A stretch of 64,000 nucleotides of DNA from Geosiphon pyriformis uo1. Lineage: Eukaryota; Fungi; Glomeromycota. The stretch lies in contig JAAOMT010000706.1 in NCBI GenBank assembly GCA_016748015.1, forward strand, positions 441,622 to 505,621. Direction: 5' to 3'. Under the pieces are notes generated by a model that ran no database searches, was not told the origin of the DNA, and worked only from the letters and a program-made list of their open reading frames with translations. Both the position numbers and the translations under genes were made by a program. Below, piece by piece: positions 1,665-64,000 of the stretch; position 1 is the stretch's first letter, and every line of letters begins with the position of its first letter.

Positions 1665-1901
1665 ATGTCTCAATACGGTGAATCATTGGCCTCTAATCAA
1701 GGAGCATATACTCCCTCAAAGAGAAATATCTTCATTCAAAATGCAAGAGAAATTCAACAAACCACGAATATCTATCAACCAGCTAATCAATTAAGCAACC
1801 AACAATATATGTTTCTTGGAGAACGAAATCTTGATTTTAGTCGAAAAGAAGATTTAATGGAACCTACCTTCCATTTTTCATATATGCCCAAGAACCCTTA
1901 G
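1665..1901 (+). CDS. 78-aa microprotein, family member A (MSQYGESLASNQGAYTPS...NLDFS...TFHFSYMPKNP)
   Basis: ATG at 1665 lies inside track ORF 1608-1901. Same length as 49981-50217, with 42/78 ungapped identities. TATATAATGA at 1547-1556 is also present upstream of the paralog. Confidence 0.8.
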   Translation: MSQYGESLASNQGAYTPSKRNIFIQNAREIQQTTNIYQPANQLSNQQYMFLGERNLDFSRKEDLMEPTFHFSYMPKNP

Positions 1902-4900
1902 CTATTGCTCAATTATATTGTATATGAATATCATTTTTTGTGTCTTTGAAATATAAAAGTGTTTTTATAAGTTTTGATTGTTTCTCAAAATTCTTATTCT
2001 TTCTTGACTGCTGAACATCAGATTTGGATCTTCAACAAATTATTATTTTCATGGCCTTTTTAGAAGCTTTCACGAATTTATATTAAAGTTTTTTTAGAAG
2101 AATTTAGCTTTCTCATTTTGTAAGTTTAACTAAACTAAAAATTCTCTACTTTTCTAAGTTTCATTTTTTGGAATAAATCAATTCAAACATGGTAATCTAG
2201 GGAATTCTTTTATTTTTTAAGTTTTGAATTTAAATAACAATATTACACAAAGCCATTAACAAGTTTGCAATAACATTATTCACAAAAAACTTACTGCTTT
2301 GTGAATACAAAACATAACATAATCTAAATTGTATTATTTATGGTTGTGCTGCTTATTTAATAATTCAAATTTTTAATTAAACTAATATTATGTATTTTAA
2401 GCTTATATTTAATAAAAACTTTTTTTTGTTATTGAATTTAAATGCATAACAAAAATAATAAATACAAATAATATTATATTTTAATCATAAATTTGTTAAG
2501 AACTTATATTTGTAAAAAAAACTTTTGTATCTTAAAATTTAGTTCAATTACTCTTATTTTTGTTTTTTGTACTTTTTGTTTGATTACAACATTGAAGTTA
2601 TATTCTTAAAAAATTATTTATCCATTTTATAAATCTTTTTTATTTTTTTTATACAGAAAAAAGGCAAATATATTGGATTTTAAAAAATCTTTTTTTTTAA
2701 ATGGTTTTGTTTTTTTTGGTGTTGATACCTAAATGAAATTTATTATAATGTATAATAAATATTATAATAATTTGAACAACATTTTTCAGTTTATTATTAT
2801 TGATTCAAATATTTAAACTGAATACTACAAGTTATGTTATGTTTTTTCAAAATCCTTCTTTACAAGTTCAATTTAAAACAAATTTCTAAATAAATAATTT
2901 TTTAATATATATTTATTTCAAAGAAATAGTAAAATTTTGTGTTGAAAATAACACTATTAAAAATTACTTTATTAATGTTTTAAATAACTTTAATATAATA
3001 AATTTTGACTTTTTATATAAATTATAATTATTAATTATTTTTTAATATTTTAACAATAGTTGTTTTTTGGTAAACAACTAATTGTAACAACATTTTAATT
3101 AAAATAACATGTCTTTTAAATTTTATTTGTATTCAATTTAGTAATCTTTTTTTAAAAACTAATTGTATTTTATTTTTTATTATTAATCAAAGTATTTTTT
3201 TTTTTAAGAAAATAATACATTAACTATATAATATTTGTTAAACTTATTTTTTTTATATTTAGTATAACATGATGAAAGCAAAATTAAACAGTATTAGTTT
3301 TTAAGTATATTTAATAATGCAAAAAGTGTATTTATTTTGAGATGTTCAAAAATTAGTTCATGATTCACATATTTTTAATATGTTTATAATAAAAGTTTGA
3401 TGATATCAAATCTTAATTTAATTTTTGCAATTTACTTTTTGAAGTGGCAAATTTTAATTTTGTTATCAATCAATTTTAAGTCTAAAATTTCTTTATAATG
3501 TTTGTTATTTAAATCTTTTGATTAAAAAGTTCATCAACATACTTTGAATTTAATATGTAAGATCTCTAGTAAGAGTAAAAGACTTTTTTTCATATGATCT
3601 TTTACAATGTGATCAAACTTTTCAAAATTCAACTAATTTTTTTTTAGAATAATGGTAATTCTCTCAAGAAAAAAATTATCTATATAATATGTAGAATATT
3701 TTAAGTTTAATGAAATTTTCAAAAATGAAAAATTCGCTTAAAAATTCCAGAAAAATTCCAAAATTTAATTTTAATTAGAAAAGCATTACGATTAAACTTG
3801 AATTTTCTTTTGTCACAACTTTCAAAAATTTATTAATCAGTATGCTGATTAATGGGTTACATTAAAATTTTATTGTCAGACTATTAAACAAGAATCTATA
3901 AATAGGAAAAGTTCATTATTTGTGAATGAACAGAAAAATAATTATTTTTAATTCATGATGATAGAACATTGTTATCGCGATTAAATTTAAACTTTCCGAT
4001 CTAATGAGATAAACTTTTCCAATTTATAAATTGCATCTTAATATAGTGCATTGTATACTCCCCTGAATATGTTATATTTTAAGGTTAATTGGCTCATCTT
4101 ACAAAAAATTGAGTAACATTTTAAGAATATTAACTTTACAATTCAGGGTCATGATATGAAAAAAAAAATTGGAAAGTGTAAATCGGTGATGAGCAATTCT
4201 TTAATGTTCAAATTGATGTGAACACAATTTTGGGAATTTTTAATAGAGTTTGATCATTTAAATGCATGAAATTTTTTCTTAAACTCATTTATGACCAAGC
4301 CCATGACGTACCATGACAAATATTACCGCAACTTGCGTTTAAATTATTGAAAATTTAAACGTTGTCCCGCATGGAATTTACAAAATGATTTTAGCTGTTT
4401 CAAAAGGATATTAGATTCTAAAGATTTTTTAGAAATACTTTAATGGTACAAACGTTTCGTCTTGAGAGCTCTGTTTAAAATTTAAAGATATTTTCTTCTT
4501 ACTCCAAGAAATTTGGTAAATTATCTTTTATTTTACCAATTCAAAAAAGTTCTTAACTAATAAAATGCACCATTTTTTTAAATTATCTAATTCTCATAGT
4601 ATGTAGGTATGTTCTTTGAATTATAAGATTTCGATCTTCATCGTCAATGAAAAGGCAAGATCGTAGCTTCAAAAGACCTGCAATTATGTTACCAAATCTC
4701 TGACTCAGGACACAATTAAAGCTATGCACATACTTTTAAAACAAAAATTGTCAATCGTAACATTTTAAAGTCTAAAAAATGCTTTTATAGGATAACAAGC
4801 AAATGTTGATCGCAGTGGTTTATCAAAAATCATGATGAAACTACGACATGCATGCAATTAGCATTGATACTACCAACGTTGAGACAATATATACAGTGAT

Positions 4901-5909
4901 GCATCTCCACACCGGTCAAACTGTTACTGTTAAAGTTTTAACTTGTTGAACCAAAAATCTTTGTATCTTCATAACTTCTTTATTAGTCCTTTTTGATGTA
5001 AGTTTCGTAACTCACTCCGTTGCTTACCCAAATCTGATTTTCCTTACTGAGATTTTCAAGATCTTGTTCTAGTTTGGGAAATGGGATCTAGACTTAATTG
5101 GCGTGCAAAAGGAGATTTTAAGTACGCGATTTCAATTTATTTTCCGCGCCTTAATGTTCCAATTTTCTATATTTAAAACTCGAAAAGGCTTACTCAAATT
5201 TCGGGTTGCTCAATGCTTGCATACCGCTTTTTTTGTCGGTTGGCACAACGGCAAGGTCATTTCAAGATACAAATGTTTCCTAAGCATGACTAAGATCTTT
5301 AGACAGGTATTTTAAATGAAAATTTTAATTTTGAGATGTATTCTACTTGAAAATAAAAATAAAAAAAAAAGAGAAATAGACCTATGAAAAATGGGAATTG
5401 ATTTTTCAAAAATTTTAATTTCCCTCTTCCTAACACCAAAACAAAGATCTGGGTTCACGATCGAAGAGATTTGCTACTTTTTGAGAAATTCTGACCAAAT
5501 GATATTCACCAAAGTCAATTCTTTAAAGGACATTCATGGGAGACCTTACAATGTAACTCTAGTAATTATTGTCACCAATGAGAAAGATTTTCGGCAATCC
5601 TTTAGTGAAGTGCACAGGCCACAAGATTTTCCTGTAAAAATCGAAGTGGATCAATCTTAATAGGAGATAAAACTGCCAACTAGATGTACCACAAAGCTTT
5701 TTGGCCAGCTGAATATAAAAGAAGAGTCTTTTCTTGTTCAGGAGAGGATGCGAGAACGCCAGGAGAAACTTTTCCTGCAATTCGTATAACTAATTACCAG
5801 CTTGTGAAATAAAAAGTCAAAACTTTTAGATGCGGAGAAACTTTATTTAGTATCTTGTACATACATTATTCATGCACATCCTTTAGCTCGTTTAAAATTT
5901 TTTAAAAAA

Positions 5910-10414: not shown

Positions 10415-11106
10415 NNNNNNNNNNNNNNNNNNNNNNNNNNNNNNNNNNNNNNNNNNNNNNNNNNNNNNNNNNNNNNNNNNNNNNNNNNNNNNNNNNNNNN
10501 NNNNNNNNNNNNNNNNNNNNNNNNNNNNNNNNNNNNNNNNNNNNNNNNNNNNNNNNNNNNNNNNNNNNNNNNNNNNNNNNNNNNNNNNNNNNNNNNNNNN
10601 NNNNNNNNNNNNNNNNNNNNNNNNNNNNNNNNNNNNNNNNNNNNNNNNNNNNNNNNNNNNNNNNNNNNNNNNNNNNNNNNNNNNNNNNNNNNNNNNNNNN
10701 NNNNNNNNNNNNNNNNNNNNNNNNNNNNNNNNNNNNNNNNNNNNNNNNNNNNNNNNNNNNNNNNNNNNNNNNNNNNNNNNNNNNNNNNNNNNNNNNNNNN
10801 NNNNNNNNNNNNNNNNNNNNNNNNNNNNNNNNNNNNNNNNNNNNNNNNNNNNNNNNNNNNNNNNNNNNNNNNNNNNNNNNNNNNNNNNNNNNNNNNNNNN
10901 NNNNNNNNNNNNNNNNNNNNNNNNNNNNNNNNNNNNNNNNNNNNNNNNNNNNNNNNNNNNNNNNNNNNNNNNNNNNNNNNNNNNNNNNNNNNNNNNNNNN
11001 NNNNNNNNNNNNNNNNNNNNNNNNNNNNNNNNNNNNNNNNNNNNNNNNNNNNNNNNNNNNNNNNNNNNNNNNNNNNNNNNNNNNNNNNNNNNNNNNNNNN
11101 NNNNNN
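10415..11106. other. Assembly gap (N run) flanked by poly-T and poly-A tracts
   Basis: 692 consecutive N. Confidence 0.99.
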
Positions 11107-12293: not shown

Positions 12294-12751
12294 TTATTCG
12301 GCAGAATTTCCTTTTGATTCTCTGTGCATGAATTGATCTGGGATCGATAAAGAGGTTTGACGAGATTTCATGTTTTTGGATGTACAATCCTGGGAGGGGA
12401 AATGATTTGTCAAACTTATTGGACTTTGACCGCAATACAGGTATATGTCAAAGGTATCTGGGAGAACGAGGGAATTCTGGCGAGAATCTTTATACCAAAA
12501 AGTTTCAAATATTGGTTATTTCTCATTTTTTGGGCACGAAAAATTTGCAAAAAATCTTTTTAAAAATAGAACTTACCGGTACATGATAGTTTACTATCTA
12601 CGAAAGATTGTTCCGAAGATAGATTAAGACTTAATTTAGGTATTTTTAAATTTTGTAATGGTCCTTTTCTCTTTTTACAAATGATTACTTCAGGTTCCTC
12701 TGATAAACAAATACCTACTGATGATGAGGTTTGTGTCATAGTTGAAGACAT
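12294..12751 (-). CDS. Small Ser-rich protein, 122 aa, with a CTDSRQNSLVLPDTF motif; exons 12751-12577 and 12487-12294
   Basis: Donor ACCG|GTAAGT, acceptor ATAAAG|AT. Exon 2 reads DSRQNSLVLPDTFDIYLYCGQSP...KSRQTSLSIPDQFMHRESKGNSAE*. Motif and intron phase are shared with the gene at 57279-57757. Confidence 0.75.
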
Positions 12752-26945: not shown

Positions 26946-27434
26946 ATGGGATCAACATTCTCTAGTCATTTCTACCATAAAGATCCCACCACAACCACCA
27001 CCGCCACTTTCATTACAGAAAACAGTGAACACGATACCGAAATAACAACAGGATATCAGTGGCAGCATCCACTCCCAGCACCTCATACTAATCAATATTA
27101 TCAAACATATGATACTCCAAAGGTTATGGGAGCTATTAAGCGTAATCGACGGATGGGTTTTTATTTTTTGAAGAGGTGAAGGACAAAAAAATTTAAAATT
27201 TCTCATATTAAATGAAGATATGGTCCATTAAAACATCATTTTTTTTCCAGATCAGCCTCACAAGGCTTCTCCAAAGGCCAACTATATCTTGCACATTGCT
27301 ATCAAATGGGACAAGGTACCAATACTGATCTCCATAAAGCAATCCGAATTTATTATCAAGCCAGTAAGAAAGGAACCTCCGTGGTTAAATGTCACTTAGC
27401 TAATGCTGTTTTTAAAGTGGAACAGAATCTTTAG
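26946..27434 (+). CDS. Small Sel1-like repeat protein, 137 aa, N-terminal MGSTFS (possible myristoylation); exons 26946-27175 and 27251-27434
   Basis: Splice AG|GTGAAG...TTCCAG|A gives GFYFLKRSASQGFSKGQLYLAHCYQMGQGTNTDLHKAIRIYYQASKKG, a Sel1 consensus. Confidence 0.85.
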
Positions 27435-34100: not shown

Positions 34101-35087
34101 AAATATTAAAATATTTTTTTTATTAAATATAAATATTAGTATTTAATGAAAAATTAAGGGAAAATTAATTTTTTAGAAAAAGTTTTTAATTAATAAATTA
34201 ATTGATTGCAATTTTTAAAAATAGGCTTTTTTATTTTATTTTATTTTATTCAATTATTATATATATATTGATCGGAATATTATGTATACATACAAATTTA
34301 GTTAAACAATTATTTAGTATAGTCAGACCTAATATTATGTTATTGCTATTTAATTTTTTAAATAATTCACATTTTATAAATTTACTTAATGAATTTTCAA
34401 ATTTTTTTAAAAAAATAATATTGATTTAATATTTATAAAATTATAATTTAAAAAATGTTACAGAGTATAAAAAACAAATTTATATTTAAATTAATTATTT
34501 TTTCAAAGTTTTTAAAAATATGTTTAAGCATATATTTTCTTTGATTTTATCTTCAAAAAAAAAAAAAAAAAAAGATTTTTCAAAAAAATTTTACCAAGCA
34601 CATAAAAATTGATTTTTTTGACAAACTTTTTTCAAATTCAATTTTGTCATTTTAATAAATGTAATAAAAAAACAAAACCATAATTTCCTTTTGTAAAAAA
34701 ATTTTTAGTGTATCATTTTTAATTTGATAACAAATTATTCTTTTCTTAAATTATAAATCGAAGCATGAAAATTCATTTTCGTATTTCCATATTTATCATC
34801 TAATGGATCTTTTGTGTCCCCCTCTCTTTACTCTCCTACCTATATCCTGAACTTTCATTATCAGAGCAATATAAATTTGATATATTTTTCGTATTACAAT
34901 TCAATAAAAGTTAAATATATTATCGATCAAAATAGATTGTTTTTGACCAAATATTTTTGATAAATAATAGTCTGATTTATGAAATAACTACTTTGAAAGA
35001 CAAAGTTAAAAAAATTATTTTTACTAGAATTTCACTTTATCAGCTTGTACAAACTCATTTAAATTTGGTTAGTCTAATATTACATAA
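31101..35087. repeat. Right arm of the long inverted repeat (partner 13-3627)
   Basis: Reverse complement of the window start; see the left arm. Confidence 0.93.
32727..32925 (-). pseudogene. Disrupted copy (member B) of the 78-aa microprotein gene
   Basis: The first 40 codons are almost identical to 1665-1784. A net 22-nt deletion then shifts the frame (TGA at 32755-32757). The original frame also has GAA>TAA, and the PKNP* end is deleted. Confidence 0.85.
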
Positions 35088-36853: not shown

Positions 36854-39800
36854 ATGGTAATTTACTAATTTTTGACTGTTGTGAATCAGTTGCAGTTAGC
36901 ATTATTGTAAAAATGCTGACAATTTTGTTGGCTTTTCTAAACTTCAGTATCTATCTTCAAATCCGAGAACAGAAGACTTTTCAAATAGCCATGAAGCGGG
37001 TAAATTTTGGGCTCTTGTGAATACATTAATTAAATTTGTATCTAAAACTCTTGAACAATTTCAAAGAAGGACGTGAAGAAATGTTTGACGAGTCTGACGA
37101 CGAGTTTGACGATGATTTAAGTGAATCTGAGAAAAATTCTCTTACTCTCACAGAATTTTTTAATCTAACCTTTGGAACGAAGCCTTTGAAGTTTGATTCC
37201 ACTCATTTTGTTTGCGAAGAATTGGACATTTCAAAGTTTCATCAACTTGTTACACCAATGCTTGAAACTGGTGAACAGGGAATTCTACGCAACCTTTTCC
37301 CACACTTAATCGATCTTCTCAGCCGAACAGTGAGTTTTGAAAAGATTGCTACTTGCATCCAGGAAATTCTCAAGAGCGACTCAAACCAGAGCCTAAGAAA
37401 ATTAGAAACCTGCAAAGGCCGTGATTATCTTGTTGCGTTTCTTGATTATGTCCCTGATCAGTCTTTGCCAAAAATGCTCGGTACACTTGTATCTTCTAAC
37501 ATACCTGTCCCTCTCCTTTTGACAAAGGAGCATCAGTACTATGAGAAAGGTCTGAGAGTACTATCTGCTCTACGCGATGTAGTAATTGAAAAGGAATACT
37601 GCCTTTTACTGTTTATGAACTTGACAACATCCCAACTGGAGAATCCTTTTTCCAAGCAGCTTTATCCTGCCTTGTGCAAGAATCGTGAAAAATTCACAGG
37701 AATTACGTTTCCTGGTTCAATTGATATTACCTTCCATCCAGCATCAGAAAATAAGCTTCGCCGGCCTATAGCTATTGCTGAAGCATATAACCACGAACTC
37801 ATATCTGATCCATTCCAAAGTATTCTTCAAAACCTATCGAAAGAGGCATTCTTAATTATCTTGCATGCCACTGATATTGATTTTACTGGAAGTGAACCAC
37901 TCAAAGAGCTTGGAGAGCAAATTGCATTAATTGCTAGAAGCTTGGATGGGAAATTTGGCAAAAAGATTTTAATTCTTTACATGGATTCGAAATCACAACC
38001 AATCGCTTTTCGCCGTAAAATGTTCAAACAGCGAAAGCAATCACTAGAGGCATTGTTCCATCTTCATAATAATGAACATAATGTTCCCTCTGAGTTTCAC
38101 ATGAAGGTCATTTCAACTGAAAAAATGGAACAAAATCTGGAAGATATTAAAAGAGATATTTTGGTCCAGTTGCCCCCTGAAAATCAGCAACGCATGTATC
38201 CTCCTCTTGGTATCAGGCTGCCTTCTAGAGAGGTGCTAATTGTCTGGTCCGACATAAGTGATGATACTTTCACCAGATCAATGATGCAACTCGGTTTTCA
38301 GACCGGTGTAAATGGTTTTCGCCGCGCTCAAATATTCCCGGCATCTAATTATGAACGGGAAATTGAAAATCTTAAAGATAAACGACGTTTAAGCTCCGAT
38401 AAATATTCCAATTACATTTCGGATGAAGAAATTGATCAAAATGTCAAGAAATTTAATTTGGAAAAGACGCGTATTGGAGATTCTCCTCAAATCTCTGTTC
38501 TTGAGCTCTTTTCTCGAGCTATAATCAACAATAATTTCATCGAGATGAAGAATTTTGCTCGAGATATTGACAGTGTATTTAAAACTCATTTACAAATGCT
38601 TTCGTTACAAGAAAGTAGATCTACACAAAATCCAAACGACATAACGCGGGAACAACTCAAACAACAAATTGAGGATAACGATATTTCGATACATGATTTT
38701 TGGAGAGAATTTGTGATTCTCTCGACAACCAGATACACTCGTGATCTAACTGTTTTGGAAAAACTATATGGAGTGAAACCAAGGTTGGATAAAACTGCTT
38801 CAATCTTTTTTTCACTAATTTAGAAAGCTAAAACTATTTGATATTGTAACCAGCCATCTTCAAAATGCTTATAAAACATGGGTTAATGAAGGCGAAGCAA
38901 TGCAAATGTTGGATGGTTTATCACTACGCGCCCTCGATCCATCATTTTTATCGGATGTTCTTTCCTCTTTGATGTCCGATTCTAATCGAAAGTTGATTGT
39001 TATTTCTGTCATTGGTCTTGAAAGTTCCGGAAAATCGACCCTCTTAAATTATTTATTTAAATGTGGATTTTCCACGTCTGCAGGCCGATGGTAACAGATT
39101 AAATCATTCGTGATTTTTTTATAAAGGTCGCGTTGTCCATAAAGTTAAACTTAATCGCATTTATATGTATTGATTATCTTTTTAGCACTAAAGGAATGTA
39201 TATGTCCTATCGCCACTCGGATTTCAATGGAATTCCCTTTGATCTGCTTATTCTTGACTCTGAAGGAATGAGCTCTACAGCACAAAAGTATATCACCAGA
39301 AGAAGCAGTTTTGATAAAAAGATCACCCTACTAGCTCTCATGTGCTCCCAAATTGTCATCATCAATACAAAGGGGTTGACTAAAGATATTTCAAATATTC
39401 TTGAAGTATCTTCTTATCATTTAGATGCCTTGAGTAAGCGCAAATCTAAGCCACGATTACATTTTGTTTTACGCGACATGATGGACTCTAATAAAGCACA
39501 AAAGCCAGCATTCGATGATATTCGCGAAAGTCTTGAACAAATGTTCCGCGAATTGCCTGGATGCACCCAAGATTTGAATGATTTCATGACTATTTCTGAG
39601 GAAGATGTCCATCTACTGGTTAATGCATTCACTTCTTTCAATGATGATCTAAGACCCAAAGTAATGAACATGTCGGAGACCGAGCACATTCATCTGCCAG
39701 CTGTGAGCAAATCTCTGTTGTTTCATTTTTTCTTTTTCAATTGAATTGAGCATTTGAAAGGATCTAAATTTAATTTCGTCAGTTAACATATTTTTAGGAA

Positions 39801-42240
39801 TCATTTCCTTTAATTGTTTCGAATTTACGAAAGTCACTTATTTCCTCAGCGCTTAATCATATTGATACGAGGCTTTTTGAAAATGTTCATGGTAAATGGG
39901 CTGATTGTTAAACTTCTATCTGTTTATTGCTTTAACTAAAGATGTTATTTTTTTTCTTAGGATTTATAATCCATATGAAAGCAGTGTGGGAAACCATTGA
40001 CGCAGAAGAAAGCTTTTTGCATTTCGAGAATTTTAAAACAATACAAAAGTGGAATCTGATGCAGAGCTTTGTTGAAGCACAACGAATTGCTTTCCTTAAG
40101 CCTTTCAAAAAAGAGGCAAAAGAAAAAATGGAGGAAAAAATCGATAAACTGAGATTGAATCCAACTGGCTATATTGAGATCAACGAAGAATATAAAAAGT
40201 TTCTTAGGCTTTCTTCAGACAAATTCGCTAAGGCTGCGGTTGATAATTTTTTTCAAAAAGTAGGAATTCAAATTGATGATATCATAAAGGATGAAGGCAA
40301 AACTCTCATTTGTGGTATGTTTGTGACGGAGAAACTAGAGCTTGAAGCAAAATGGCGTGAAAAAGAACTTTCCTTTCAAGAAAAGGCTCTATTAAATGAT
40401 GCAGAAAAGAACTTCAAAGAAACTATTCGGCGATATAATACACTTGATGAAGCAGCAAAACTAAAAACTGATCAAGAAAGGTCTCAAAAATTGTTCAATG
40501 ATGCATGGCACGATGTGGAAACTTTCCACAAGACTTCTATGGAAAATATGGTACTCAACGAAGTTCAGCTGCAGGAGCGTGTGGTTGATTCTTTCAATAA
40601 GGCTATACAACGTGGTCAAAGCAATGTTAAAATACATGAACTGAAATCCAGAATGCAGTTTGACCGAAAATTCTGGATGAAGTTGGAGAGGCCTGCGGCG
40701 TTACAAAAATACTTGAATGCTGATCTTCAGGAGGTTCTTGAAAATATTGAATTGAAGAGCAATAATTACTTTACAAAAATCAAGAAAAAATTGTGGCTTA
40801 CTGAAAAGGCAAAACAAAATTTGAAAAACAAAGCTGCAACGGCTATTCTTGAACATATTTCTCTTCTATGCGCAACAATTTGCAGCCAAATCTCCCATCA
40901 AAAGATCTTGAGAAACGAGTATGATGAAACTTTTCAATGGCTTCAAAAGTTTTCAGACGATTTATTTCTTTTTATGAGTAATCAATTCAATGATCCAAAT
41001 GCCGAATTTTTTCCTGAGCTAAATGATTTTAACATGATTGAGGTAGGCTATTGAACTTAATGGATTGTTTTTAACCCTTGGAGAATATTAATAAATCAAA
41101 TTATCTTACCAGAAATTTTATCGATGGCAAATCTATTCTACTTTGCAAAAGAATAATGCTCAATGGCTTGAGAACCAGGAGGGGAATTTAAAAAAATACA
41201 AAACTGAACTTGAAACAACTTTTAGAGAACTTGTGGCAAATAACTCTTCTTTTCAATCTCTCTCTAAAAACTTCTCAAAACACATCATCAATCGATTCGA
41301 GAAAACGCTTATTACCCTCGAAAAAAGCGTTCAAAATGATGTTGAGGAATATATCAAAGGTTGGGTTACTAAATATGGAGCCACTAACGAAGCACACGAA
41401 CGCAGTTTTGGCAAGCGTGATCTAAAGGCAGCACGCTGGTATATAAATGATTTGAGTGGATATTTAAGGCATGTTTTCGATGAAGAGTCCAAAAAGCGTC
41501 TTGAAGATATTAAAGAGAAAAAAGTTAAAAACATCATGGAAAAGATTGAAGAAACCCAATCTTCTCTTATGTCCCTTATTGATAAAGATTGGAGTCGAAG
41601 CTTTTCAGAAACTCTTGAAGATATTATTTCCAAACACGAGGGTTCCTCTCACTCAAAGAATGTCCATCAGTATGTAGAAAACTTCTCCTTCGCTGGTTAT
41701 TGTCGGGTAGATAGATCATCGCCAATCTGGGATGCACTCAAGCGAGATCTAGCCAAAGAATTTAAGGAATTAGAAGGAAATTGGGAAGGAGAAATAAATT
41801 CTCGCCTTCAAGCTCTCATTACAAGTACAATTAACATAAACTGGAGTAAAATAGGAGGCTGTACAGCAAGTTGTCCTATTTGCAAAGCAAAATGTGAACT
41901 TCCCGAAGGTGATCATACTCATGAAACTTCAACACACATCTTGGCTGCTTTCGGTGGATGTAATGACGTGAATACTCATGAGGCGGTTTTAATTGTTTGT
42001 TCTGAGGTAGATGCGCGTGATAAAGGAAAATGGCGGAGTCGTTTTGTGACATCCTTTGTTACAATCAATGAATTAATGCAAGCAAATCAGCCAAAATGGA
42101 AACCGCTATCATTTGGTCAAGTCCAAGAAGAAAAAGCAAGAAATATGAAACATATTTGGTGGCATTTGAGAAAAGAGTTATGTGAAAAATATGATATGAT
42201 AGACTCAACCCCAAATGATTGGGAGAGATATGCTCGGTAG
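36854..42240 (+). CDS. Interferon-inducible very large GTPase (VLIG/GVIN1)-like protein, ~1609 aa; exons 36854-36856, 36948-36999, 37067-38783, 38854-39090, 39186-39702, 39798-39891, 39961-41042, 41113-42240
   Basis: P-loop VISVIGLESSGKSTLLN; splicing restores SAGRCTKG; G3 LILDSEG; G4-like FVLRD; long helical region; C-terminal GCTASCPICKAKC...HTH...H motif typical of GVIN/URGCP. All seven introns are GT-AG and phase-compatible. The exon-3 acceptor could alternatively be 37069 or 37078. Confidence 0.9.
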
Positions 42241-44756
42241 ATTTCTCGCAGTGATATTCATTGAATTATAGCCACAGAATTCGAAATCAAACATTTTGAA
42301 TATCCTTTAAAACAAATTAGAGGAAAATGTGGCAATTTTTGTATTAAATTTTTAAATAGCACATTCTTTTTGCTTTCTTAATTTGCATTTTCTGCGATCA
42401 ACAAATAAATTGGTCATTGATAATTAACCAATGTTAAAGGTGATTAGTCATTTTAACATAAATTTTTAACCGAATTAAACAATATTTTATTATTTAAAAT
42501 ATGAAAAGTTTTTTCATGATCAGTTTAATTTGGTACTCTAAGCTAACAAACATTAATAAATATAGTATATATTTGCTATAGTAAAAAAATTAGATTGTAA
42601 GAATAATTTCGAATTTTTTTTAATTCAAAATTTAAAATGGAAGTTTTATGCCTGTGAGGAAGTTAATACCAGTACTATATTTGCAGTGACAAATATTTTT
42701 AATAGTGAAATCACTTTATTTATATCGAATGTATATCTAATTGAAAATTCTTCAAATGAATAAAAATTTAAATGCATTATATTTTGAGTCTGTAATGCAG
42801 CAAAGATTTAGACAGAGATTATACAAATAATTTAATTGAAATATTTAATAATATCAAAAACATGACAAGTCATTAATGTAAAACTCAAGATGTTACTCTA
42901 TCACAACTTTTATTAAACTTATTCTTATTCTTCAATTTAGGTTTAAAATAATTTTTTTTTAAAAAAAAAGAACAAACTTAATCAATCAATCGATTAATAA
43001 AAGTGTTCAATAAAATAATTATCTCATATGAATGAAAATATTGACAAAAGCTTCGCCGAAAATCCTTAAATCCCAAATAATAATTTACAGTAATGAAAAT
43101 GAAAAAAAAAATTTTTTTTTTAGTGAAATATCTTATATTAATATATTTTAAGAATTTACTTTTTTAGAATTCATTTCAAAAGGTTTTTTTTACAATAATA
43201 TATTCCCACTTGATAAATATTTCTAACCTTTTTGATAGATAAAAATTATATAGTTATTTAATCAAATTTTTTAAAATATTTAGTTAAGGGTATTGTTCAT
43301 TTAGTGTCATATATTTTTTTTAAATAGAAATGATAATCTCATATAGGATTTGATGTTGGATCTGATAAATAGGGAAAACTCCGAGATCATGATAAATATG
43401 AGATTAAATAACTTGTTAAATGCTTGAGTCGATAGATGTAGTTGAAGCCAAATTAGAAAATGGTTTAAAGAAATATTCAATGGATTTAAAAAGAAACTAC
43501 GATTGGCGTAAGATTCACTTAGAATTATATTATCTAGATTGACAATTAGATAGGAACTCATTACGAGGCTTTTGAGATAACATGAAATACTTTATCATCT
43601 AAAATACTTTTTTAAAATGAAATTATTCAATTCCTTTACGCCTACTATAATATCCTTGGAAATGGTAGACGTTATTTTATTTTACAGAAAGAAATAATAG
43701 AATGAAAATTATTGAAGATAATTATTAGGAAATATTTCAGAAGGTACTCCAAGTGCTTTGACTAACGGCTTCTTATTTTAATTTAAATAAATTTCAAGTT
43801 TTCAATATTAAATAAATATCACTGAAAATAATTTAGAGTTTGATTATTGTTTTTGTCTGAGATAATTTATTAGGTTAAAATACCTTTAACGATGATTAGG
43901 TTCTAACAAAATTTTATAGGTAAATACATTGAATAAATTATTAATTGTCTTGGGATCCGGTTACCAGATCGAACCAGCCAGTCATTTTATCATCAGAATT
44001 GGGCGTCAAAATAAATGGAGATGTCTCTTTATTATTTAAAATGAGCTGAATTAGATTGATTAATATACTGTATATATTGAAAATTGTTTACACCAGCAAT
44101 TTATTTGTGTTACATCTAATACCATAAAAAGCATTATCTACAATTAAATTTTTTAATGTAGTTTATTTGTTGATAAATAGGGAATTAAAAAGGCCATCTA
44201 TATAAAAAAATTTTTTTTTTAAAAAATCATAGAATTTTCATTTTATTTTATTTTTAAAAAACAATGTTGAATTCATTGGGATCATTAAAAATTCAATTTT
44301 TTATTTTGCCTTTTTGCCCTGAAAAATTATTTTTTTGACGCTTGATAATTTTATAAATTAAAAATGTTAGTCTTATTGCATTGTAACGCAAAGTAATTTA
44401 AAGGATAAAAAACAGTGAAATTTCTTTTAAACTTGAAGAGATCAAAAAATCTTTAAATTTTGTTATTTAGTTAGAAACAGTCTGTTGAATTCCAAATATA
44501 AATTAGGGAATTTTTGCTCTACAAATTATACTAGCCATTGTATTAAATACTTTATCTACAGTACACATGAGGAAAAACTAGACAGTGTATCAACAATTAA
44601 TCGTGAAATATTTCAAGTAATTTTCTGGAAATTGCACCACCATTTTTTCCCATTATATATTTACATGTGAATTGATTCCTTTCAAAAGCTATTGAATCGT
44701 TTTTAAAATAATTTATAACCTCTAAAGTTTCAACAAATAATAATTGAGAATACATA

Positions 44757-46240: not shown

Positions 46241-49200
46241 TTTACTTGTTTGTTTATTATTGTTCAACATTTGACATTGAATCTAAAGTTCATCATCAAA
46301 CATGAAAGATGATTCGCTCACTTCTAATTATCAAATGCAAATTTTACCTGATATCAAATGTGCCATTGATATTATATACTTGACATTTATCACAGTTTTT
46401 TTTGATCATCAGATCAAAAACGAATCAGCATAATAATATTTACAAATGGAGAGATGTGTACCCGTCTATTACCGTTAATTTTTTTGTGGTATTCTCTTTT
46501 ACATTATCTGACAGCTTGACAATTATAGGCTTCTATTATCATCATTCTGAGATCATCAAATATTAGGAATTCCCTCAATCAAGCAATAAAGTTCTATTCA
46601 TAATAGTTTATGTGGCGAGAGGGCTGAAGTCTAGTATACCCGATAGTTCTGGTTTCTCTTCTGTTATTGACGCTTAAGTTTCTTATTACTTTTGAGATTG
46701 CCCCGGCTGTGTTATCTTGCATTTTGAATGCACTACAGCTGCAATAACGAAACCGTTTGTTTGTGCTCAGGATGAAGCCAATCTTGTATTTCAAAAAGGT
46801 TAGGTAAAAAAAATGGGTATATTATTTGTATTCTTAAAAGTTTAATGTTGCGATAATTTTGTGCTCGGGTGTACGAGGGAGAAAACGAGATTATTTTTTT
46901 TCTGTGGTTTATTAGATCCTAATTTTTCAGATCTCATCCTAAAGGTTTATTGTGCATCCTTGGTATGACGAATGACAGATCGCAAATGGTTAGAAATTGA
47001 GCACGGAAAAAAATTCTCAATGTGAGAATCATAGACGATAGGGGTTGTATGATCCGGTTAATGCATACCACGCATGGCACCATTCACGAACAAAAGCCTT
47101 TGCATATATTGTGTAAAAAAAAGTACACTGAAATTGTGTCATTTTACCATGTTATGTAGCGTGATATGTTAGCCTGTGCAGAAAACACGCAGCAATGAAA
47201 TTAGTTTGTCGTATAAGATAGGTATACGGTAAATCCCTTTCTTTGACGTTTAATTTCTTCCCGCCAAAATTTTGATTATTCACCTATTCAAAAAGCCGTG
47301 ATTTGCTCGTGCCTTATTTTAGTTTTTGTCCTATTATTCAGCGAAAAATTATATATAGAGTTTTTTGAACTAGACATTCTAGAAAGACAATGGAAAGAAA
47401 TGACATGGGGGGGAGGGGGAAAGTTTTGCCGGGTCAATGGTTTTGAGATTAAAGAGTTTCGGTGGTTATGATATACGAATCGGGCGGGACCGTGCGTGAT
47501 TTCAAGTTTGATAATGGGCCAGTAAGAATCGATCATTTAAAGAAAATTCGAGATTTATTGAATCACCCCACAAGTTATCTTAAAGACCAAAAGGTGTTTA
47601 TGTTAAAAAAATTATATTGTTCTACATATTTGGACCTTTAATAATAATAATAATAATAATTTTGGGAATAAAAGTGACTCAAAAAAAGTTTGAGAACTTT
47701 TAAGGAGAGAGTTGTGAAATCATGGAAATTTTTTTCCCGAAAAATAATATTTTATTTGGTTTTTGCTTAGTAAATGTGTGTAATAAAAAGACAATAGGGG
47801 CTGAAACTTGTTTTTTTGTTTGTTTTATCATGTTGAGAAACAATAATCATGTGTGTGTTGAAAGAAAATATACACATAGATTAACTATTGAATGGATTAA
47901 TAAGCTCACGATCAAATCTTTTATAAAGATGCCAACAATCCAAGAAAATTCAACGATTTTTTTTTTTACCAGGAAATAACAACTTTCTCCCCCACAAAAC
48001 ACTAAAGATTTTGTAGATTAATTCAACGTTTTTGATTTGTTTTTAAGATTGAGAATTCCTGGATTGTTAACACCCAGGTCGTTCTCTTTAAAATAAATGA
48101 AGGTTTTACAAACAATAAAAAATCCAACCGTATTCATTTATTTGAACAAATTATATTTATTGTTTATAAAAATTTTTTTGACATCTATTAGAATAGAACT
48201 TTGAAATTTTTGTGAAATGTTGAATCAGCATAACAAGATCTATTTTAAACAGAATAGAGGGTTATTCATAGCACTATTTTTTTTTTAAAAAAAAAATCTA
48301 ATAATCTAAAATATTGGACAAAAGTTGATTGTAACTTATTTTTTTAAAATTCAAAGTTCCTTTATCGGGGGGGGGGGGCATAAATAATAAAACTTGGCAA
48401 AGAGCTTTCAAATATTTATAAAAACTTTTTTTTTTTTTTTGCTCACTGAAAATTCAAGATTTTAAAATTGAATATTTGAACTTTTAACTTTGAACAAAGA
48501 GATATACAAAATATATTTGTTTCAAAAACTCAAAATCAACCATCTTGATAATATTTTTAAAATAACAGAAAAAATGGGCGTGGAAAAAATAAGCATTTAA
48601 AAGTATTAAAATTATTTGATTTTTAGCGAAAATTGAGATTCAAAGATTATTAGCCTTATAAACCACAAATTTTTTTTTTTGCAACACAAAACCAAAGAAT
48701 ATTTTTTTGTTCTTTCCAAAATTGGCTAGTAACATTAGAAAATTTTTAAAGTCATTTTTTAAAGTCACTATTTTTCTAAAGCAACTACGTTTCTGGTTTT
48801 TTTTCGTTAAACAAATAAATCAGAAAAAGAAACAAAAATAGATATAAAAATAAAAATAGAAAGAGAATAGTCAAAGAAGCGAAATAAAACAAGAGCAAAG
48901 ATACAAAATACACAAAAAGGTAACAGGAAGATTCACATAACAAAAATGTAAAATTAATATTTTCGATCAAAGGAACTTTTATATGCTTGAAATGTATCGT
49001 AATTTAGAACAGACCAAAATGCTATGAATATTGTCCTTTATCAAAAAATCAAAGTATTTCTACGTTCATGATGACAGTCATTAATCTTTGAAAGTAGGTT
49101 ATCAGATATGAAAGAGAGATAAACTAAGGAATACTTGGCATATGCGAAAATTGAAATGTAGGCTCCATCAATTCTTCCTTTTTACTAAATTCAAGGTTCT

Positions 49201-49980
49201 GTTCTTGGACAATTGAAATTTGCCCATTATTTAATTGACCGTTTGGTTGGTTGGTTGGTTGGTTGGTTATTTAATTTTTGATTGGGAAGTGTTATTTGAA
49301 TAATTTGTGGAGCATCTCGAATTAACGCTTTACTTGTCGAAGGGATGTATGGTACTTGGTTAGAGCTGAAGAATTCACAGTTTTGAGCCATGCTAAAAAA
49401 AATGGTTTTATTTCTGAAAATTTTGGCTTCTTTTAGAGTTGAAAAGCCATCATTTTATATTAAAATCTTCAACAGGTCTGATAAGACCAAAATTTTCTCG
49501 TATGTTCTCAAATTGGTTTCAATGTTAAATGATGAATATATATTTTTGTTCCTCAAAAAAAAATCCCATGAGGGTTTTGGGTTAAAAAGAATATATTGGG
49601 ACTTGTAATAAAAATCATCAAGATCTTCATCCAGTTAGATTAATTTTAAGTTCAGTTATGCCAAGAAGAATTCAGTTTTGTCTATTACTTAATTGTCCAT
49701 TTGGTTTATTTCTGTAGCATTTCGGATAATTCCTTAAGAATATTTGTGTTTATATGTGATATTTTCCAAGAACGTTATAGCTGTACCAAAATATCAAAAA
49801 TTAGTTTCACAGTTTTGCTATATAATGAGTCCTTTTTTTACTAATCTTGAAAAATTTATCTTACTATCTTTTTATTCTCCCTACTAGTCAGCCCCAATTT
49901 AAGCCTAGTCAATCGAACTACGATAATTAAGTAAGGTCTTTATTTCCTCGCCTTTTAACGACAAAAATCATCAGAATCAA

Positions 49981-50217
49981 ATGTCTCAAAGCGGTGAATT
50001 CTTAAGTTCTAACCAAGGAACATACACCCCTTCAACAAGCAGTGAATTAATTCGTAATTCCACAGAGATTCATCATACAACTTCTCCTAATCAACCAAAT
50101 GGACAATTAAATAATGGACAAAACTCGATTATCCTTGGACAAAACCTTGATTTTAGTCAAAGAGTGGAATTGATAGAATCTACATTTCACCTTTCGTATA
50201 TGCCAAGTAACCCATAA
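49981..50217 (+). CDS. 78-aa microprotein, family member C (MSQSGEFLSSNQGTYTPS...NLDFS...TFHLSYMPSNP)
   Basis: Ungapped 54% identity to 1665-1901. TATATAATGA at 49819-49828. Confidence 0.8.
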   Translation: MSQSGEFLSSNQGTYTPSTSSELIRNSTEIHHTTSPNQPNGQLNNGQNSIILGQNLDFSQRVELIESTFHLSYMPSNP

Positions 50218-57278: not shown

Positions 57279-57757
57279 TTATGGAAGTTTTGATTCTTGC
57301 TCAAAAGCAAAGTTATCAGGGATCACCAATGAACCTTGGCGAGAGTCTATAGAGATAAAACAAAGTATTACAGTTTTAACTGAGAAATCAAGATATTAGA
57401 GGCGAATCAAAGAAAACGTACCAGTGCAATCAAGATGTTTCCTTCTGAGGGATTTTTTGATCTCAATAGGGTAAGTGTTTTCAACAGATCGAGATTTGAA
57501 GGTAGATAAATTTGGGTTAGCGTCATCATTGTTCTTTTCTTTTTTTGTGAATGTCTCTACGTATTCTGTTCCCTTATCCTCAACACTAGTTTCTACATCT
57601 TAAATTTAACCATTCAGTTTTATTTATAATTTTATTACTTTTTTTCGATTTAGAAAATTAGTTCATTACCTTCTTCATTAAATTCATTTGCCTTTAGTTT
57701 CTCAGCCTCAGGTTCGTGGGTAATAATATCAGCAAATATGAAATCTTTTGTAGACAT
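57279..57757 (-). CDS. Small acidic protein, 110 aa, with a CTDSRQGSLVIPDNF motif; exons 57757-57670, 57598-57422, 57346-57279
   Basis: Not in the ORF track. Introns GTAATG...TTTAAG (71 nt) and GTACGT...CTATAG (75 nt), both phase 1, give MSTKDFIFADIITHEPE...KKSLRRKHLDCTDSRQGSLVIPDNFAFEQESKLP*. Confidence 0.75.
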
Positions 57758-60314: not shown

Positions 60315-60763
60315 ATGCCAAAACGTCTTATATTCCATCCAACTGGGGCGAGAGAACAGGTGAACCTCGGAAGGGATTATTTGTTCACTTTTCAACAGCC
60401 TGACCATCATTCTGCTTTTTATTGGTTTGAACGGTAAATTGTTATTGTGAAAAATTGAAACTATCCAAAAATATTCTTAGAAAGAGAATCGGTTGGATAT
60501 ATATATTTTGAAATCAAAATATTGATTGATAACATAACTGGTTTCACCCGGTTTCTTTTAGGGCCGCACAGCAAAACGAATCAATCGGCCATTACTGGAT
60601 GGGTCGTGTGCACCAATGTGGCTACGGAACCATGAAAGATCCACATCAAGCATTGAAGTGGTATCTTCATGTTTGGCAAAAGGGCCCTTCAGTGTCACAG
60701 TTTTTTGTAAGACAGCTATTAAAAGATTTTTTCCAATTAAATGAGATAATTAATCAATGTTAA
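60315..60763 (+). CDS. Small Sel1-like repeat protein, 106 aa; exons 60315-60433 and 60562-60763
   Basis: Not in the ORF track. CG|GTAAAT...TTTTAG|G gives EQVNLGRDYLF...SAFYWFERAAQQNESIGHYWMGRVHQCGYGTMKDPHQALKWY, i.e. two Sel1-like repeats. Confidence 0.82.
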
Positions 60764-61254
60764 GAATATCATCAAAGGTAAAATATTGGAATAATTATTT
60801 TTTGATTATTATTAAGAATGTATCATATATTATTAAAAAAATAAATAAATAAATAAATAAATATTTTCTCAAAATTAATCACTTTACCAATAGAAATGAA
60901 TCAACACCCGAACTATAACATAACAAAAGGAAATTAACTGGAAACATAAAATACCAAAATTATCTTAAAATTGCCAATTAAATAATTTGAGCTTTTCAAA
61001 ATAAATAATGTTTGTTATCTCATTTCATCAAATTCTTATTTTTGAGTTGCAGTTGTTGTATTTAAAAGACAAAATATTAATCTCCATAATCTAATATGGG
61101 ATAAGTTTAAAACGAAAAACTTAATTTGTCTTTTGGAATAATCAAAGGGTCTTTTATAGCACCAATCATAGCAAATAATAAATATTATTATGCTCTGAGA
61201 ACTCCAAGACTCTTTAAAATAAACTCTAGGATTCAATTCTAACTAATTTAAAGT

Positions 61255-61660
61255 ACTTGTACGCTTTGAGTCTTTATCTTGTTGAAAGCGTCATTCCTTC
61301 CATTAATTTCTCCCAACATACTGTTGCAAAAATCTCAATGTATAATAGCTTCCTCCTTCATACAAAAGACTACCCCCACGCAAATTTTTAATTCTGTTTG
61401 AAAAATAGTTGAAATACTGTTTCTTTAGAAATAAAGTTTATTTTTCTAGTTATTGTTAAGATAAAATTTAGTTTTTTAACATGTTTCTTTCTGCTTTTGA
61501 ACTTTTGTTAGTATCAGCGTAATAAGTCGTAGGTTTTTTGTATATCCAAGTGATTTTAAATATCTGCCAATCGTGTCTGCTCACTCTATTCTAGTTTTAT
61601 AGCAATTTTTCGCAGAATTTATTAACATACTTTTCTCGATACATGTGTCATAATATTCTT
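61255..61660 (-). mobile_element. Degenerate Tc1/mariner (DDE) transposase fragment
   Basis: Frameshifted pieces DTIGRYLKSLGYTKNLRLITLILTKVQKQK, SKETVFQLF, FAWG and *RFQQDKDSKRTS (compare the Tc1 motif WxFQQDNDPKHTS). Confidence 0.78.
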
Positions 61661-62240
61661 GCGACGACTATTATCCCAAAAAACAATTTAAAGACAGCAA
61701 ATATTTGTCAATACTATTAAAAAATTTTTATTAATAGCAGAAATTTATCCCAATTTGATTTCAAAAAAAATTAAAATTCTAAACAGTTATTATCTTTTCA
61801 AAATTAATTAATTGCTTGCGATCCTTCAATTATAAAAAAAATAGCAAGATAAATTTTGATTTATCATGCAATAGAAATATATTATGGTACTTTCAAAAAA
61901 ATTTGGCAAAATAGTATTCTTTAAAAGAGGTGATGTACATAATAGCAGATAAATGAGGCAGCCTTTACAAAAAGATCGAATTAAAAATGTAAAGACGATT
62001 CGAACCGATAAAATTTATTTTAATAAAAAATTTGTTGTTTTGGCTTTTCTGATAATATAATTTCGTGGAACTGTTAATGATGATTTTTAAAATTTAAAAT
62101 TCACCAAAAACTTTAATATATAATGACTTGCCATCTTGAAATAAAAATTTATCAACAAGAATGCTTCAAATTTATAATCTGACCATTAAAGAAAATATTT
62201 CAGTTAAAATTCAAATATCAACAGTATTGAATTTATAATT

Positions 62241-62712
62241 TTTTTTTTAAAATATAAAGTAATTTATGGGAAACAAATGTTTTATTTTTTAAATATAAAG
62301 TAATTTATGAGAAACAAAAGTTTTATTTTTTAAAATATAAAGTAATTTATGAGAAACAAAATTTCTATTTTTTAAAATATAAAGTAATTTATGAGAAACA
62401 AATGTTTTATTTTTAAAAATGTAAAGTAATTTATGAGAAACAAAATTTCTATTTTTTAAAATATAAAGTAATTTATGGGAAACAAAATTTCTATTTTTTA
62501 AAATATAAAGTAATTTATGAGAAACAAAAGTTTTATTTTTTAAAATATAAAGTAATTTATGAGAAACAAAATTTCTATTTTTTAAAATATAAAGTAATTT
62601 ATGAGAAACAAAAGTTTTATTTTTAAAAATATAAAGTAATTTATGAGAAACAAAAGTTTTATTTTTTAAAATATAAAGTAATTTATGAGAAACAAAATTT
62701 CTATTTTTAAAA
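62241..62712. repeat. 42-bp minisatellite, 11 copies (AAAATATAAAGTAATTTATGAGAAACAAAAGTTTTATTTTTT)
   Basis: GTAATTTATG recurs at 62259, 62300, 62342 ... 62678 with period 42 and no unique spacers. Confidence 0.95.
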
Positions 62713-63311
62713 TAATTATCTTAATATAAAATGAAAATAAAAAATCATCATTATTTTGATATATTCTTATTTTTAAATTTTATTAAAACTTTTAAAAATA
62801 AGCCCTACCTCATTATTTTGATAATTTAATAATTATCAGATAAATATGGAATTTTTATCTTGATAAATTTTTTCTGCTTTTAAATTTTTTCAAAATTAAT
62901 TTATCATAATTTTAATAAACCATAGTTACAATTAGGAATAAAAATATAACTAAAATCCAATACTCAATAACAGGGGTATTAAACAAATAAACTAAAAAAA
63001 TTATCTCAAGCTTTAATTCGCAAACCGGATGGTTAATATTAGCAAAACAGCTTTCCAAAAAACATATTAATTATGGTTCAGAAAATTCATTGATCAAACC
63101 ATTGATTTATTTTAAAAAAGTTAAATTAGAGTAAGCGCTTTTTATCAAATAAGTGCGCACCAACTTTCATAAATATGATCTAACTCTTGATTATTTCACT
63201 TGAAAAAATTTATTTATTATAGTGTTTGCTATATATATAACCATTTTCAATTTGTCCTATTATTAAAGATATTTAATATCACAAAGACTTTTCCTCGAGT
63301 AAAAGTTTATA

Positions 63312-64000
63312 ATGGTAGGTTGCTGAATTTGAATGTTGTGAATTGAAATTACTGCTGAATTCATTGGCTTTTCTCAATTTTCCTAAACTTTAGCCCATAT
63401 ATCCAAATTCGAATGAAGAGCACTCGTCAAATAGCCGTAAAGAGGGTAAATTTTAGTCTTCTGTGAATATATTCAAATTTGAAATTTAAAACTCACTTGA
63501 AAAATTTCAAACACGGATTTGAAGAAATTTTTGACGACGAGTTTAATGATGATTTTAGCGATGATAAGGAAACCTCTCTTACTTTCATGGAATTTTCTAA
63601 TCTAACTTTTGGGACAAAGCCTTTGAAATTTGACCCCACTGATTTCGTTTGCGAAGAATTGGATATTGCAAATTTTGTTCAACTTGTTACACCAATGCTT
63701 GAAACTGGTGAACAGGGAATTCTACGCAACCTTTTCCCACACTTAATTGACCTTCTTAACCGAACAGTCACTTTTGAGAAGATCCCTACCTGTATCCAAG
63801 AAATTCTCAAAATTAATTCGAACCCAACCCTTAAAAAATTAGAAACCTGTAAAGGTCGTGATTATCTCGTGGTGTTTCTTGATCATATTCCTGATCAGTC
63901 TTTGCCAAAAATGCTCGGTACACTTGTATCTTCCAATATACCTGTCCCTCTCCTTTTGACAAAGGAATATCAGTGCTATGAGAAAGGTCTCAGAGTACTA
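63312..64000 (+). CDS. Second VLIG/GVIN1-like GTPase gene, 5' part, truncated by the window end; exons 63312-63314, 63394-63445, 63525->64000
   Basis: Same ATG-only exon and 52-nt second exon as 36854. The open frame SLTFMEFSNLTFGTKPLKFD...MLETGEQGILRNLFPHLIDLL...KGLRVL is roughly 80-85% identical to copy 1. Confidence 0.9.

What the first reader, a model, noticed from the sequence alone, without database searches (positions are those of the whole stretch)
1665..64000. A four-gene module occurs twice in the same order and orientation: microprotein(+), SRQxSL-motif protein(-), mini-Sel1(+), very large GTPase(+)
Seen: set 1 is 1665(+), 12294-12751(-), 26946(+), 36854(+). Set 2 is 49981(+), 57279-57757(-), 60315(+), 63312(+). 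The spliced pairs are linked by sequence and shared intron position and phase; the intronless microproteins by length and 54% identity. Known: GVIN-type GTPases are immunity-associated in animals, and Sel1 proteins are adaptors expanded in AM fungi. Inference: either an old tandem segmental duplication or a co-inherited signalling/defence cassette built around a giant GTPase. Divergence is very uneven (GTPases ~80-85%, microproteins 54%, the other two motif-level only), so a single duplication would need later gene conversion or very different constraints.
Basis: partly seen in the sequence, partly recalled or inferred. Interest (0 to 1): 0.82.

Follow-up and report, generated by a model that had tools for sequence, protein, structure and literature searches.

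The report
Old local gene duplication, not a cassette
Two stretches of this Geosiphon pyriformis contig do carry look-alike genes in the same order, but this looks like the worn remains of an old local duplication in a duplication-prone region, not a conserved four-gene defence unit.

Summary

- **Small-protein pair:** 78 aa each, 54% identical. They belong to a Geosiphon-only family under purifying selection.
- **SRQ-motif pair:** they share a roughly 17-residue motif split by the same phase-1 intron. In 128 Mb the motif occurs only in these two genes.
- **GTPase pair:** URGCP/GVIN-type, 82% identical at the 5' end.
- **Mini-Sel1 pair:** related only at family level (about 22 bits to each other). 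Each matches other Sel1 repeats better, in a genome with over 2,000 candidate Sel1 stretches.

The "twice" picture is incomplete. The window holds two more decayed small-protein copies. A third GTPase lies 31 kb downstream on the other strand. Three further GTPase copies lie on other contigs.

None of the four other GTPase loci has the small genes. No other small-protein locus has a GTPase. GVIN-like loci of Rhizophagus and Gigaspora lack all three small genes.

Recent GTPase duplications copied only the gene plus about 2 kb upstream.

Best reading: an old tandem segmental duplication, later fractionated and overprinted (about 0.5). The cassette reading is not supported. Transcription could not be tested because no RNA run was listed. 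An earlier scan note had already reported the GTPase cluster and its gene conversion.

The parts
1665..1901 (+). Small-protein gene 1 (78 aa, intact). Member of a Geosiphon-only family of small Q/N-rich proteins with a conserved C-terminal motif.
   Evidence: ORF. Family of at least 10 intact ORFs with the same start and stop; dN/dS is 0.14-0.5 for most pairs and 0.56-1.64 among the near-identical C505 copies. Profile search of 1.84 billion proteins: the only true hits are G. pyriformis proteins.
461..3628 (+). Left arm of a 3.2-kb inverted duplication carrying small-protein gene 1. Its partner is 31099-34120.
   Evidence: Self-blastn: 84% over 2057 nt and 72% over 1159 nt, inverted.
10415..11106 (.). 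Assembly gap in intergenic DNA. It separates small-protein gene 1 from the rest of set 1.
   Evidence: N run flanked by poly-T and poly-A. No claimed gene touches it.
12294..12751 (-). SRQ-motif gene 1. Two exons (12577-12751, 12294-12487), 122 aa, two copies of the RQxSLxxPDxF motif.
   Evidence: Canonical splice sites and frame arithmetic. Genome-wide pattern search finds the motif only here and in SRQ2.
26946..27434 (+). Mini-Sel1 gene 1. Two exons (26946-27175, 27251-27434), 137 aa, one full Sel1-like repeat.
   Evidence: Pfam Sel1 27.6 bits, E 4e-6, below the cut-off. It matches at least 76 other Sel1 stretches in the genome at 27-37 bits, against about 22 bits to mini-Sel1-2.
31099..34120 (-). 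Right arm of the inverted duplication. It contains a decayed small-protein copy at 32726-32925.
   Evidence: The copy has a 22-nt deletion and an in-frame stop.
36933..42312 (+). Giant GTPase gene 1 (URGCP/GVIN-type). About 5 exons, roughly 1,600 aa, P-loop GLESSGKST in exon 2.
   Evidence: ORF map matches the C453 copy, with conserved small introns. Pfam URGCP_GTPase 40.9 bits (exon 2) and 22.4 bits (exon 3).
49127..49391 (-). Frameshifted small-protein copy, head-to-head with small-protein gene 2. Its closest relative is the copy on C430/C530 (82% DNA identity).
49981..50217 (+). Small-protein gene 2 (78 aa, intact).
   Evidence: It is closer to copies on contig C430 (67% aa, dS 0.57-0.78) than to gene 1 (54%, dS 1.18).
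57279..57757 (-). SRQ-motif gene 2. Three exons (57670-57757, 57422-57592, 57279-57346), 108 aa, one motif copy split by the same phase-1 intron as in SRQ1.
60315..60763 (+). Mini-Sel1 gene 2. Two exons (60315-60433, 60562-60763), 106 aa.
   Evidence: Pfam Sel1 23.0 bits. Four better matches elsewhere in the genome, 28-32 bits.
61246..63378 (+). Upstream block of GTPase 2, shared at 91-93% with the GTPase locus on contig C335. It marks the 5' limit of a recent GTPase-only duplication.
   Evidence: blastn. dS between GTPase 2 and the C335 copy is 0.046.
63379..64000 (+). 5' part of giant GTPase gene 2, which runs past the end of the window.
   Evidence: 82% DNA identity to GTPase 1. The genome search reports a 1429-aa open frame.

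Best explanation
The repeated order is a relic of an old tandem duplication of one chromosome segment. That segment carried at least a small-protein gene, an SRQ-motif gene and a GVIN-type GTPase gene.

Inferred later steps:
- The two copies lost different redundant genes (fractionation), which would leave set 2 compact and set 1 still holding housekeeping genes.
- The small genes diverged until only motifs remained.
- The GTPase copies were kept similar by gene conversion.

Shown later events:
- A 3.2-kb inverted duplication made a second copy of small-protein gene 1.
- Small-protein copies dispersed as ORF-sized units.
- GTPase-only duplications of about 7-10 kb went to a third site on this contig and to three other contigs.

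The mini-Sel1 genes may be part of the old segment, or may be two unrelated members of a huge family.

The pairs, the extra copies, the duplication limits and the absence of the set elsewhere are shown. The single ancestral event and the fractionation are inferred. Nothing indicates that the genes work together.
For: - Three real paralogue pairs are collinear and co-oriented.
- The random order and strand null gives p about 0.008-0.034 for three families.
- The back-translated RQxSLxxPDxF pattern has 8-9 hits in 128 Mb. The only three that encode the motif are in the two SRQ genes, against 0-1 for the control. That family therefore duplicated locally.
- In both the small-protein and GTPase families the set-1 member is the most divergent copy, and the set-2 member groups with dispersed copies. 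This fits a first split between the sets followed by later dispersal.
- GTPase homogenisation is visible: 3' ends 96-97% identical among the three C666 copies, 5' ends 82-91%.
- The region is duplication-prone: the inverted 3.2-kb duplication, the head-to-head small-protein pair, and the inverted pair 23789/28507 at 43% identity.
Against: - Divergence is not uniform. dS is about 1.18 for the small-protein pair and 0.43 for the GTPase 5' ends. This needs gene conversion or separate events.
- Apart from the SRQ pair, the pairs are not each other's closest relatives.
  - Small-protein gene 2 is closest to copies on C430.
  - GTPase 2 is closest to the C335 copy.
  - GTPase 1 is closest to the third C666 copy.
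  - Each mini-Sel1 has better matches elsewhere.
- No non-coding similarity links the sets, and the two GTPase upstream regions are unrelated.
- The families were chosen after the fact.
- Small-protein gene 1 sits across an unverified scaffold gap.
- Its pseudogenised twin lies on the other strand, 4 kb from GTPase 1.
Confidence: 0.5

Rival explanations
1. There was no single event. Several independent small duplications in a duplication-prone region, plus two unrelated members of the very large Sel1 family, happen to lie in the same order.
For: - Demonstrated duplication units are small and gene-specific. Small-protein copies share only about 300-360 nt around the ORF.
- GTPase copies share the gene plus 2-6 kb.
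- dS differs about three-fold between the pairs.
- The mini-Sel1 genes are not specifically related.
- The genome has 2362 first-look Sel1 candidates.
- With only SRQ and GTPase counted, chance collinearity is 0.08.
Against: - With three families the null gives 0.008-0.034.
- Sel1-like stretches are not dense locally. Only three were found in about 313 kb of fetched DNA, two of them the mini-Sel1 genes.
- The mini-Sel1 pair shares an intron position and phase.
Confidence: 0.33
2. The set is a functional cassette. The small proteins and the mini-Sel1 adaptor act with, or regulate, the giant GTPase, and selection keeps them linked.
For: - Both sets keep intact ORFs for all four genes.
- The small-protein family is under purifying selection.
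- The SRQ motif is strongly conserved while the rest of the protein has diverged.
Against: - Four of six GTPase loci lack all three small genes within 20 kb upstream.
- No contig other than C666 carries both a small-protein copy and a GTPase.
- The youngest GTPase duplication excludes mini-Sel1-2.
- GVIN-like loci in R. diaphanus, R. irregularis and G. rosea have none of the small genes within 10 kb.
- Spacing differs about three-fold, and set 1 is interrupted by unrelated genes.
Confidence: 0.07
3. The arrangement is partly an assembly artefact. Collapsed or mis-joined repeats around the gap and the inverted repeat could have placed small-protein gene 1 in set 1.
For: - A 692-N gap separates small-protein gene 1 from the rest of set 1.
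- The assembly contains identical duplicate contig ends, C430/C496 and C430/C530.
Against: - Seven of the eight genes lie on gap-free sequence.
- The copies are diverged, not identical, so they are not collapsed repeats.
Confidence: 0.05

Closest known systems
Fractionated tandem segmental duplication (ordinary paralogous blocks in eukaryotic genomes)
   Same: - Collinear, co-oriented paralogue pairs.
- Different genes lost from each copy.
- Later secondary duplications and gene conversion.
   Different: - Only three or four pairs survive.
- Most pairs are not each other's closest relatives.
- No non-coding similarity remains, so the single event is inferred and not demonstrated.
GVIN1 / VLIG / URGCP-type giant GTPases, with tandem clusters in vertebrates and, as seen here, in Glomeromycotina
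   Same: - URGCP-type G domain with a P-loop.
- About 1,600 aa.
- Multi-copy and clustered, with gene conversion between copies.
- R. diaphanus also has two tandem copies.
   Different: - This is a fungal lineage.
- No interferon context and no tested function.
- No conserved accessory genes found next to them.
Sel1-repeat (SLR) protein expansions in arbuscular mycorrhizal fungi
   Same: Both mini genes carry a Sel1-like repeat with the typical helix-turn-helix consensus. The genome has thousands of such repeats.
   Different: - One to one and a half repeats only, with no kinase or other domain.
- Scores fall below Pfam's cut-off.
- The N-terminal halves are unrelated to each other.

Membership tests
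URGCP/GVIN/VLIG-type giant GTPase | URGCP-like GTPase domain (Pfam PF25683) | tested here: inconclusive
   Searched exon by exon: 40.9 bits (profile 142-220) and 22.4 bits (profile 245-343). Each is below the whole-protein cut-off of 55, and the rough sum is 63. The genome scan hits the same exons. Homologues in Gigaspora carry PF25683.
URGCP/GVIN/VLIG-type giant GTPase | Walker A P-loop GxxxxGK[ST] in the G domain | tested here: met
   GLESSGKST in exon 2, at about 38990-39020.
URGCP/GVIN/VLIG-type giant GTPase | Very large protein (over 1,500 aa) with a GVIN1-type C-terminal region | tested here: inconclusive
   The open frames sum to about 1,650 codons before trimming at the splice sites. 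My Pfam scan of the C-terminal exons found no family. Products at relatives' loci carry PF26772 GVIN1_C, mostly weakly.
Sel1 repeat (PF08238) | Match to the Sel1 profile above the curated cut-off of 30.7 bits | tested here: not met
   27.6 bits (E 4e-6) and 23.0 bits (E 1e-4). The E-values are significant and the consensus residues are visible, so the genes are Sel1-like, but below Pfam's threshold.
Single segmental duplication | Paralogue pairs in the same order and orientation | tested here: met
   Null simulation.
Single segmental duplication | Pairs are each other's closest relatives, with similar silent-site divergence | tested here: not met
   Only the SRQ pair is exclusive. The small-protein, GTPase and mini-Sel1 genes each have closer relatives elsewhere. 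dS is 1.18 against 0.43. Later duplication and gene conversion could explain this.
Conserved gene cassette | The same gene set recurs at other copies in the genome | tested here: not met
   No small-protein, SRQ or Sel1-like sequence within 20 kb upstream of the GTPases on C335, C453 and C483, or around the third C666 copy. No GTPase on other contigs bearing small-protein copies.
Conserved gene cassette | Synteny in related species | tested here: not met
   GVIN-like loci of R. diaphanus, G. rosea and R. irregularis, 10 kb each side: no small-protein, SRQ-motif or Sel1-like hit. The small-protein family has no homologue outside G. pyriformis.
Conserved gene cassette | Co-expression | not testable with these tools
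   No RNA run was listed for this sequence.

The most novel reading that the evidence does not exclude
The small-protein and SRQ-motif genes were retained next to a GVIN-type GTPase in both duplicates because they act with it. For example, the SRQxSLxxPDxF peptide could be a docking or phosphorylation motif that regulates the GTPase. That would make this the first accessory set described for a fungal giant GTPase.
Probability: 0.05. Interest if true: 0.6.

Novelty: new member of a known kind. Interest (0 to 1): 0.2.

Why it matters
It mostly removes a tempting but unsupported "defence cassette" reading. In this genome, gene neighbourhoods around expanded families are by-products of repeated local duplication.

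Three results have modest value of their own:
- A Geosiphon-only family of small proteins, about 78 aa, under purifying selection.
- A genome-unique pair of small proteins sharing a strongly conserved linear motif split by an intron.
- A map showing that the giant GTPase genes spread as gene-plus-promoter units and exchange sequence with each other.

Tried and rejected
- **RNA evidence:** no RNA run was listed for window 57200-63199. Transcription and splicing of the small genes remain untested.
- **Word-based homologue search with small-protein gene 1:** no candidates.
- **ESM Atlas look-ups** for SRQ1 exon 2 and small-protein gene 1: no usable hit.
- **Exact-product look-ups** for two window ORFs, meant to recover the public gene calls: nothing on record. 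Records of this genome may be left out.
- **Pattern search:** I shortened it and it ran.
- **Intron-position test:** That test is left open.
- **Other scans:** tRNA and Rfam scans of the window found nothing. Pfam found nothing for the small-protein or SRQ proteins.
- **Literature:** a search found no paper on GVIN-type GTPases in fungi.
- **Joined proteins:** joined spliced proteins were not sent to any search.
- **Withheld sequence:** most of GTPase 2 and GTPase 3 read as withheld N. Full-length GTPase trees could not be made.


Full report
**Where and what.** The window is G000 contig C666, 441622-505621. The organism is Geosiphon pyriformis. Proteins matching the small-protein family are NCBI entries of that species, on contigs whose lengths match this assembly. 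The sequence is AT-rich, 14-36% GC in 2-kb windows, and its genes have short introns.

**The gap.** The N run at 10415-11106 lies between a poly-T and a poly-A tract in intergenic DNA. The 298-aa "ORF" across it is an artefact of the N run. The gap touches none of the eight genes. It does separate small-protein gene 1 from the other three set-1 genes, so that part of set 1 rests on a scaffold join I could not check.

**The four pairs.**
- *Small proteins.* The ORFs at 1665-1901 and 49981-50217 are both 78 aa and 53.8% identical.
- *SRQ genes.* Both have canonical splice sites and frame-consistent models of 122 and 108 aa. They share L[SD]CT|DSRQxSLVxPDxF across a phase-1 intron at the same codon. 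SRQ1 carries a second motif copy.
- *SRQ motif in the genome.* A back-translated RQxSLxxPDxF pattern has 8 hits in 128 Mb. Three are in these two genes. Five belong to an unrelated repeat that encodes a different peptide. The control gives 0-1. A relaxed pattern adds one non-motif hit. This is a genuine two-member family confined to the window.
- *Mini-Sel1 genes.* Both give frame-consistent two-exon models of 137 and 106 aa, with a phase-2 intron at the same point of a partial repeat. Their Sel1 scores are significant but below Pfam's cut-off.
- *GTPases.* The 5' ends are 82% identical. Copy 1 has a conserved five-exon structure, a P-loop and URGCP_GTPase matches.

**What the finding left out.**
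- The window holds two more small-protein copies, both decayed: 32726-32925(-), with a 22-nt deletion and a stop, and 49127-49391(-), frameshifted.
- The first lies in the right arm of a 3.2-kb inverted duplication, 461-3628 against 34120-31099, at 84% and 72% identity. This duplication brackets 27.5 kb that includes SRQ1 and mini-Sel1-1.
- A third GTPase lies about 31 kb beyond GTPase 2 on the minus strand. Three more lie on C335, C453 and C483.

**Family sizes.**
- The small-protein family has 22 hits on at least 11 contigs.
- At least 10 copies are intact ORFs of 70-86 aa with the same start and stop. dN/dS is 0.14-0.5 for most pairs, at dS 0.6 or more; it is 0.56-1.64 among the three near-identical C505 copies. 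This is a real coding family.
- A profile search of 1.84 billion proteins found only G. pyriformis members. It also returned two spurious repeat proteins.
- Copies share only about 300-360 nt around the ORF.
- Sel1 has 2362 first-look candidates genome-wide.

**Are the pairs each other's partners?**
- Only the SRQ pair is exclusive.
- Small-protein gene 2 is closer to the C430 copies (67% aa, dS 0.57-0.78) than to gene 1 (dS 1.18).
- GTPase 2 is nearly identical to the C335 copy (dS 0.046). That similarity runs 2.1 kb upstream to 61246, about 500 nt past the stop of mini-Sel1-2.
- GTPase 1 shares about 2 kb of upstream sequence with the third C666 copy.
- The two GTPase upstream regions are unrelated to each other.
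- By the same method, the mini-Sel1 exons score about 22 bits to each other. Mini-Sel1-1 scores up to 30 bits to repeats of a C563 gene. Mini-Sel1-2 has genome hits of 28-32 bits.

**Recurrence.**
- Within 20 kb upstream of the C335, C453 and C483 GTPases, and around the third C666 copy, there is no small-protein, SRQ or Sel1-like sequence.
- No contig other than C666 has both families.
- GTPase homologues exist in Gigaspora and Rhizophagus. Their loci, 10 kb each side, contain none of the three small-gene types. A fourth locus, on a metagenome contig, shows no Sel1 gene call either. R. diaphanus has two tandem GVIN-like genes.

**Chance.**
- Random order and strand give p of 0.001-0.0025 for four families. 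They give 0.008-0.034 for three, and 0.08 for SRQ plus GTPase.
- Sel1-like stretches are sparse locally: three in about 313 kb. The Sel1 coincidence is therefore not trivial.
- The choice of families was made after the fact.

**Verdict.**
- Collinearity of three true local pairs favours one old tandem duplication. It was later fractionated, overprinted by smaller duplications, and blurred by GTPase gene conversion (3' ends 96-97% identical). I give this reading about 0.5.
- Independent duplications with chance order remain a serious rival, at about 0.33.
- A functional cassette is not supported. Expression could not be tested.
- An earlier scan note had already reported the three clustered GTPases and their conversion mosaic. 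My flank comparison agrees with it.

Noticed in passing
window 461-3628 and 31099-34120: A 3.2-kb inverted duplication brackets 27.5 kb of genes. Across the small-protein copy, the first ~190 nt aligned (upstream flank plus the 5' part of the ORF) are about 99% identical, against 84% overall. This hints at a recent conversion patch. The arms could mediate inversion of the enclosed segment.
   Followed up: partly
window 23789-24346(+) and 28507-28959(-): Another local paralogue pair, 43% identical over 112 aa and inverted, flanks mini-Sel1-1. Pfam finds no convincing family; the only hit is a sub-threshold Gly_radical match for one member.
   Followed up: partly
window 50180-50742: Immediately after small-protein gene 2 there is a low-complexity repeat that reads as open frames on both strands (ETEME-type and FPFLF-type). 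It is probably not coding.
   Followed up: no
window 12200-12290: A GAAC/GAAT microsatellite starts right after the stop codon of SRQ1.
   Followed up: no
L024:5971-6192 (C421): A single Sel1-like stretch (25.9 bits with a local HMM, no Pfam hit) lies between two small-protein-like fragments on contig C421. It is the only other Sel1-like stretch in about 210 kb of fetched flanks.
   Followed up: partly
L038 (Rhizophagus diaphanus QKKE01000164.1): Two GVIN-like genes lie in tandem, in the same orientation, about 5 kb apart. Tandem duplication of this GTPase is therefore not peculiar to Geosiphon.
   Followed up: no
window 5910-7340, 7929-8935, 15656-16654: Ordinary genes lie inside set 1: a BTB plus SPRY protein, an F-box protein and a mitochondrial carrier.
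   Followed up: partly
contigs C430/C496 and C430/C530: Small-protein copies and their flanks are identical between contig ends. This suggests redundant contig ends or haplotigs in the assembly.
   Followed up: no
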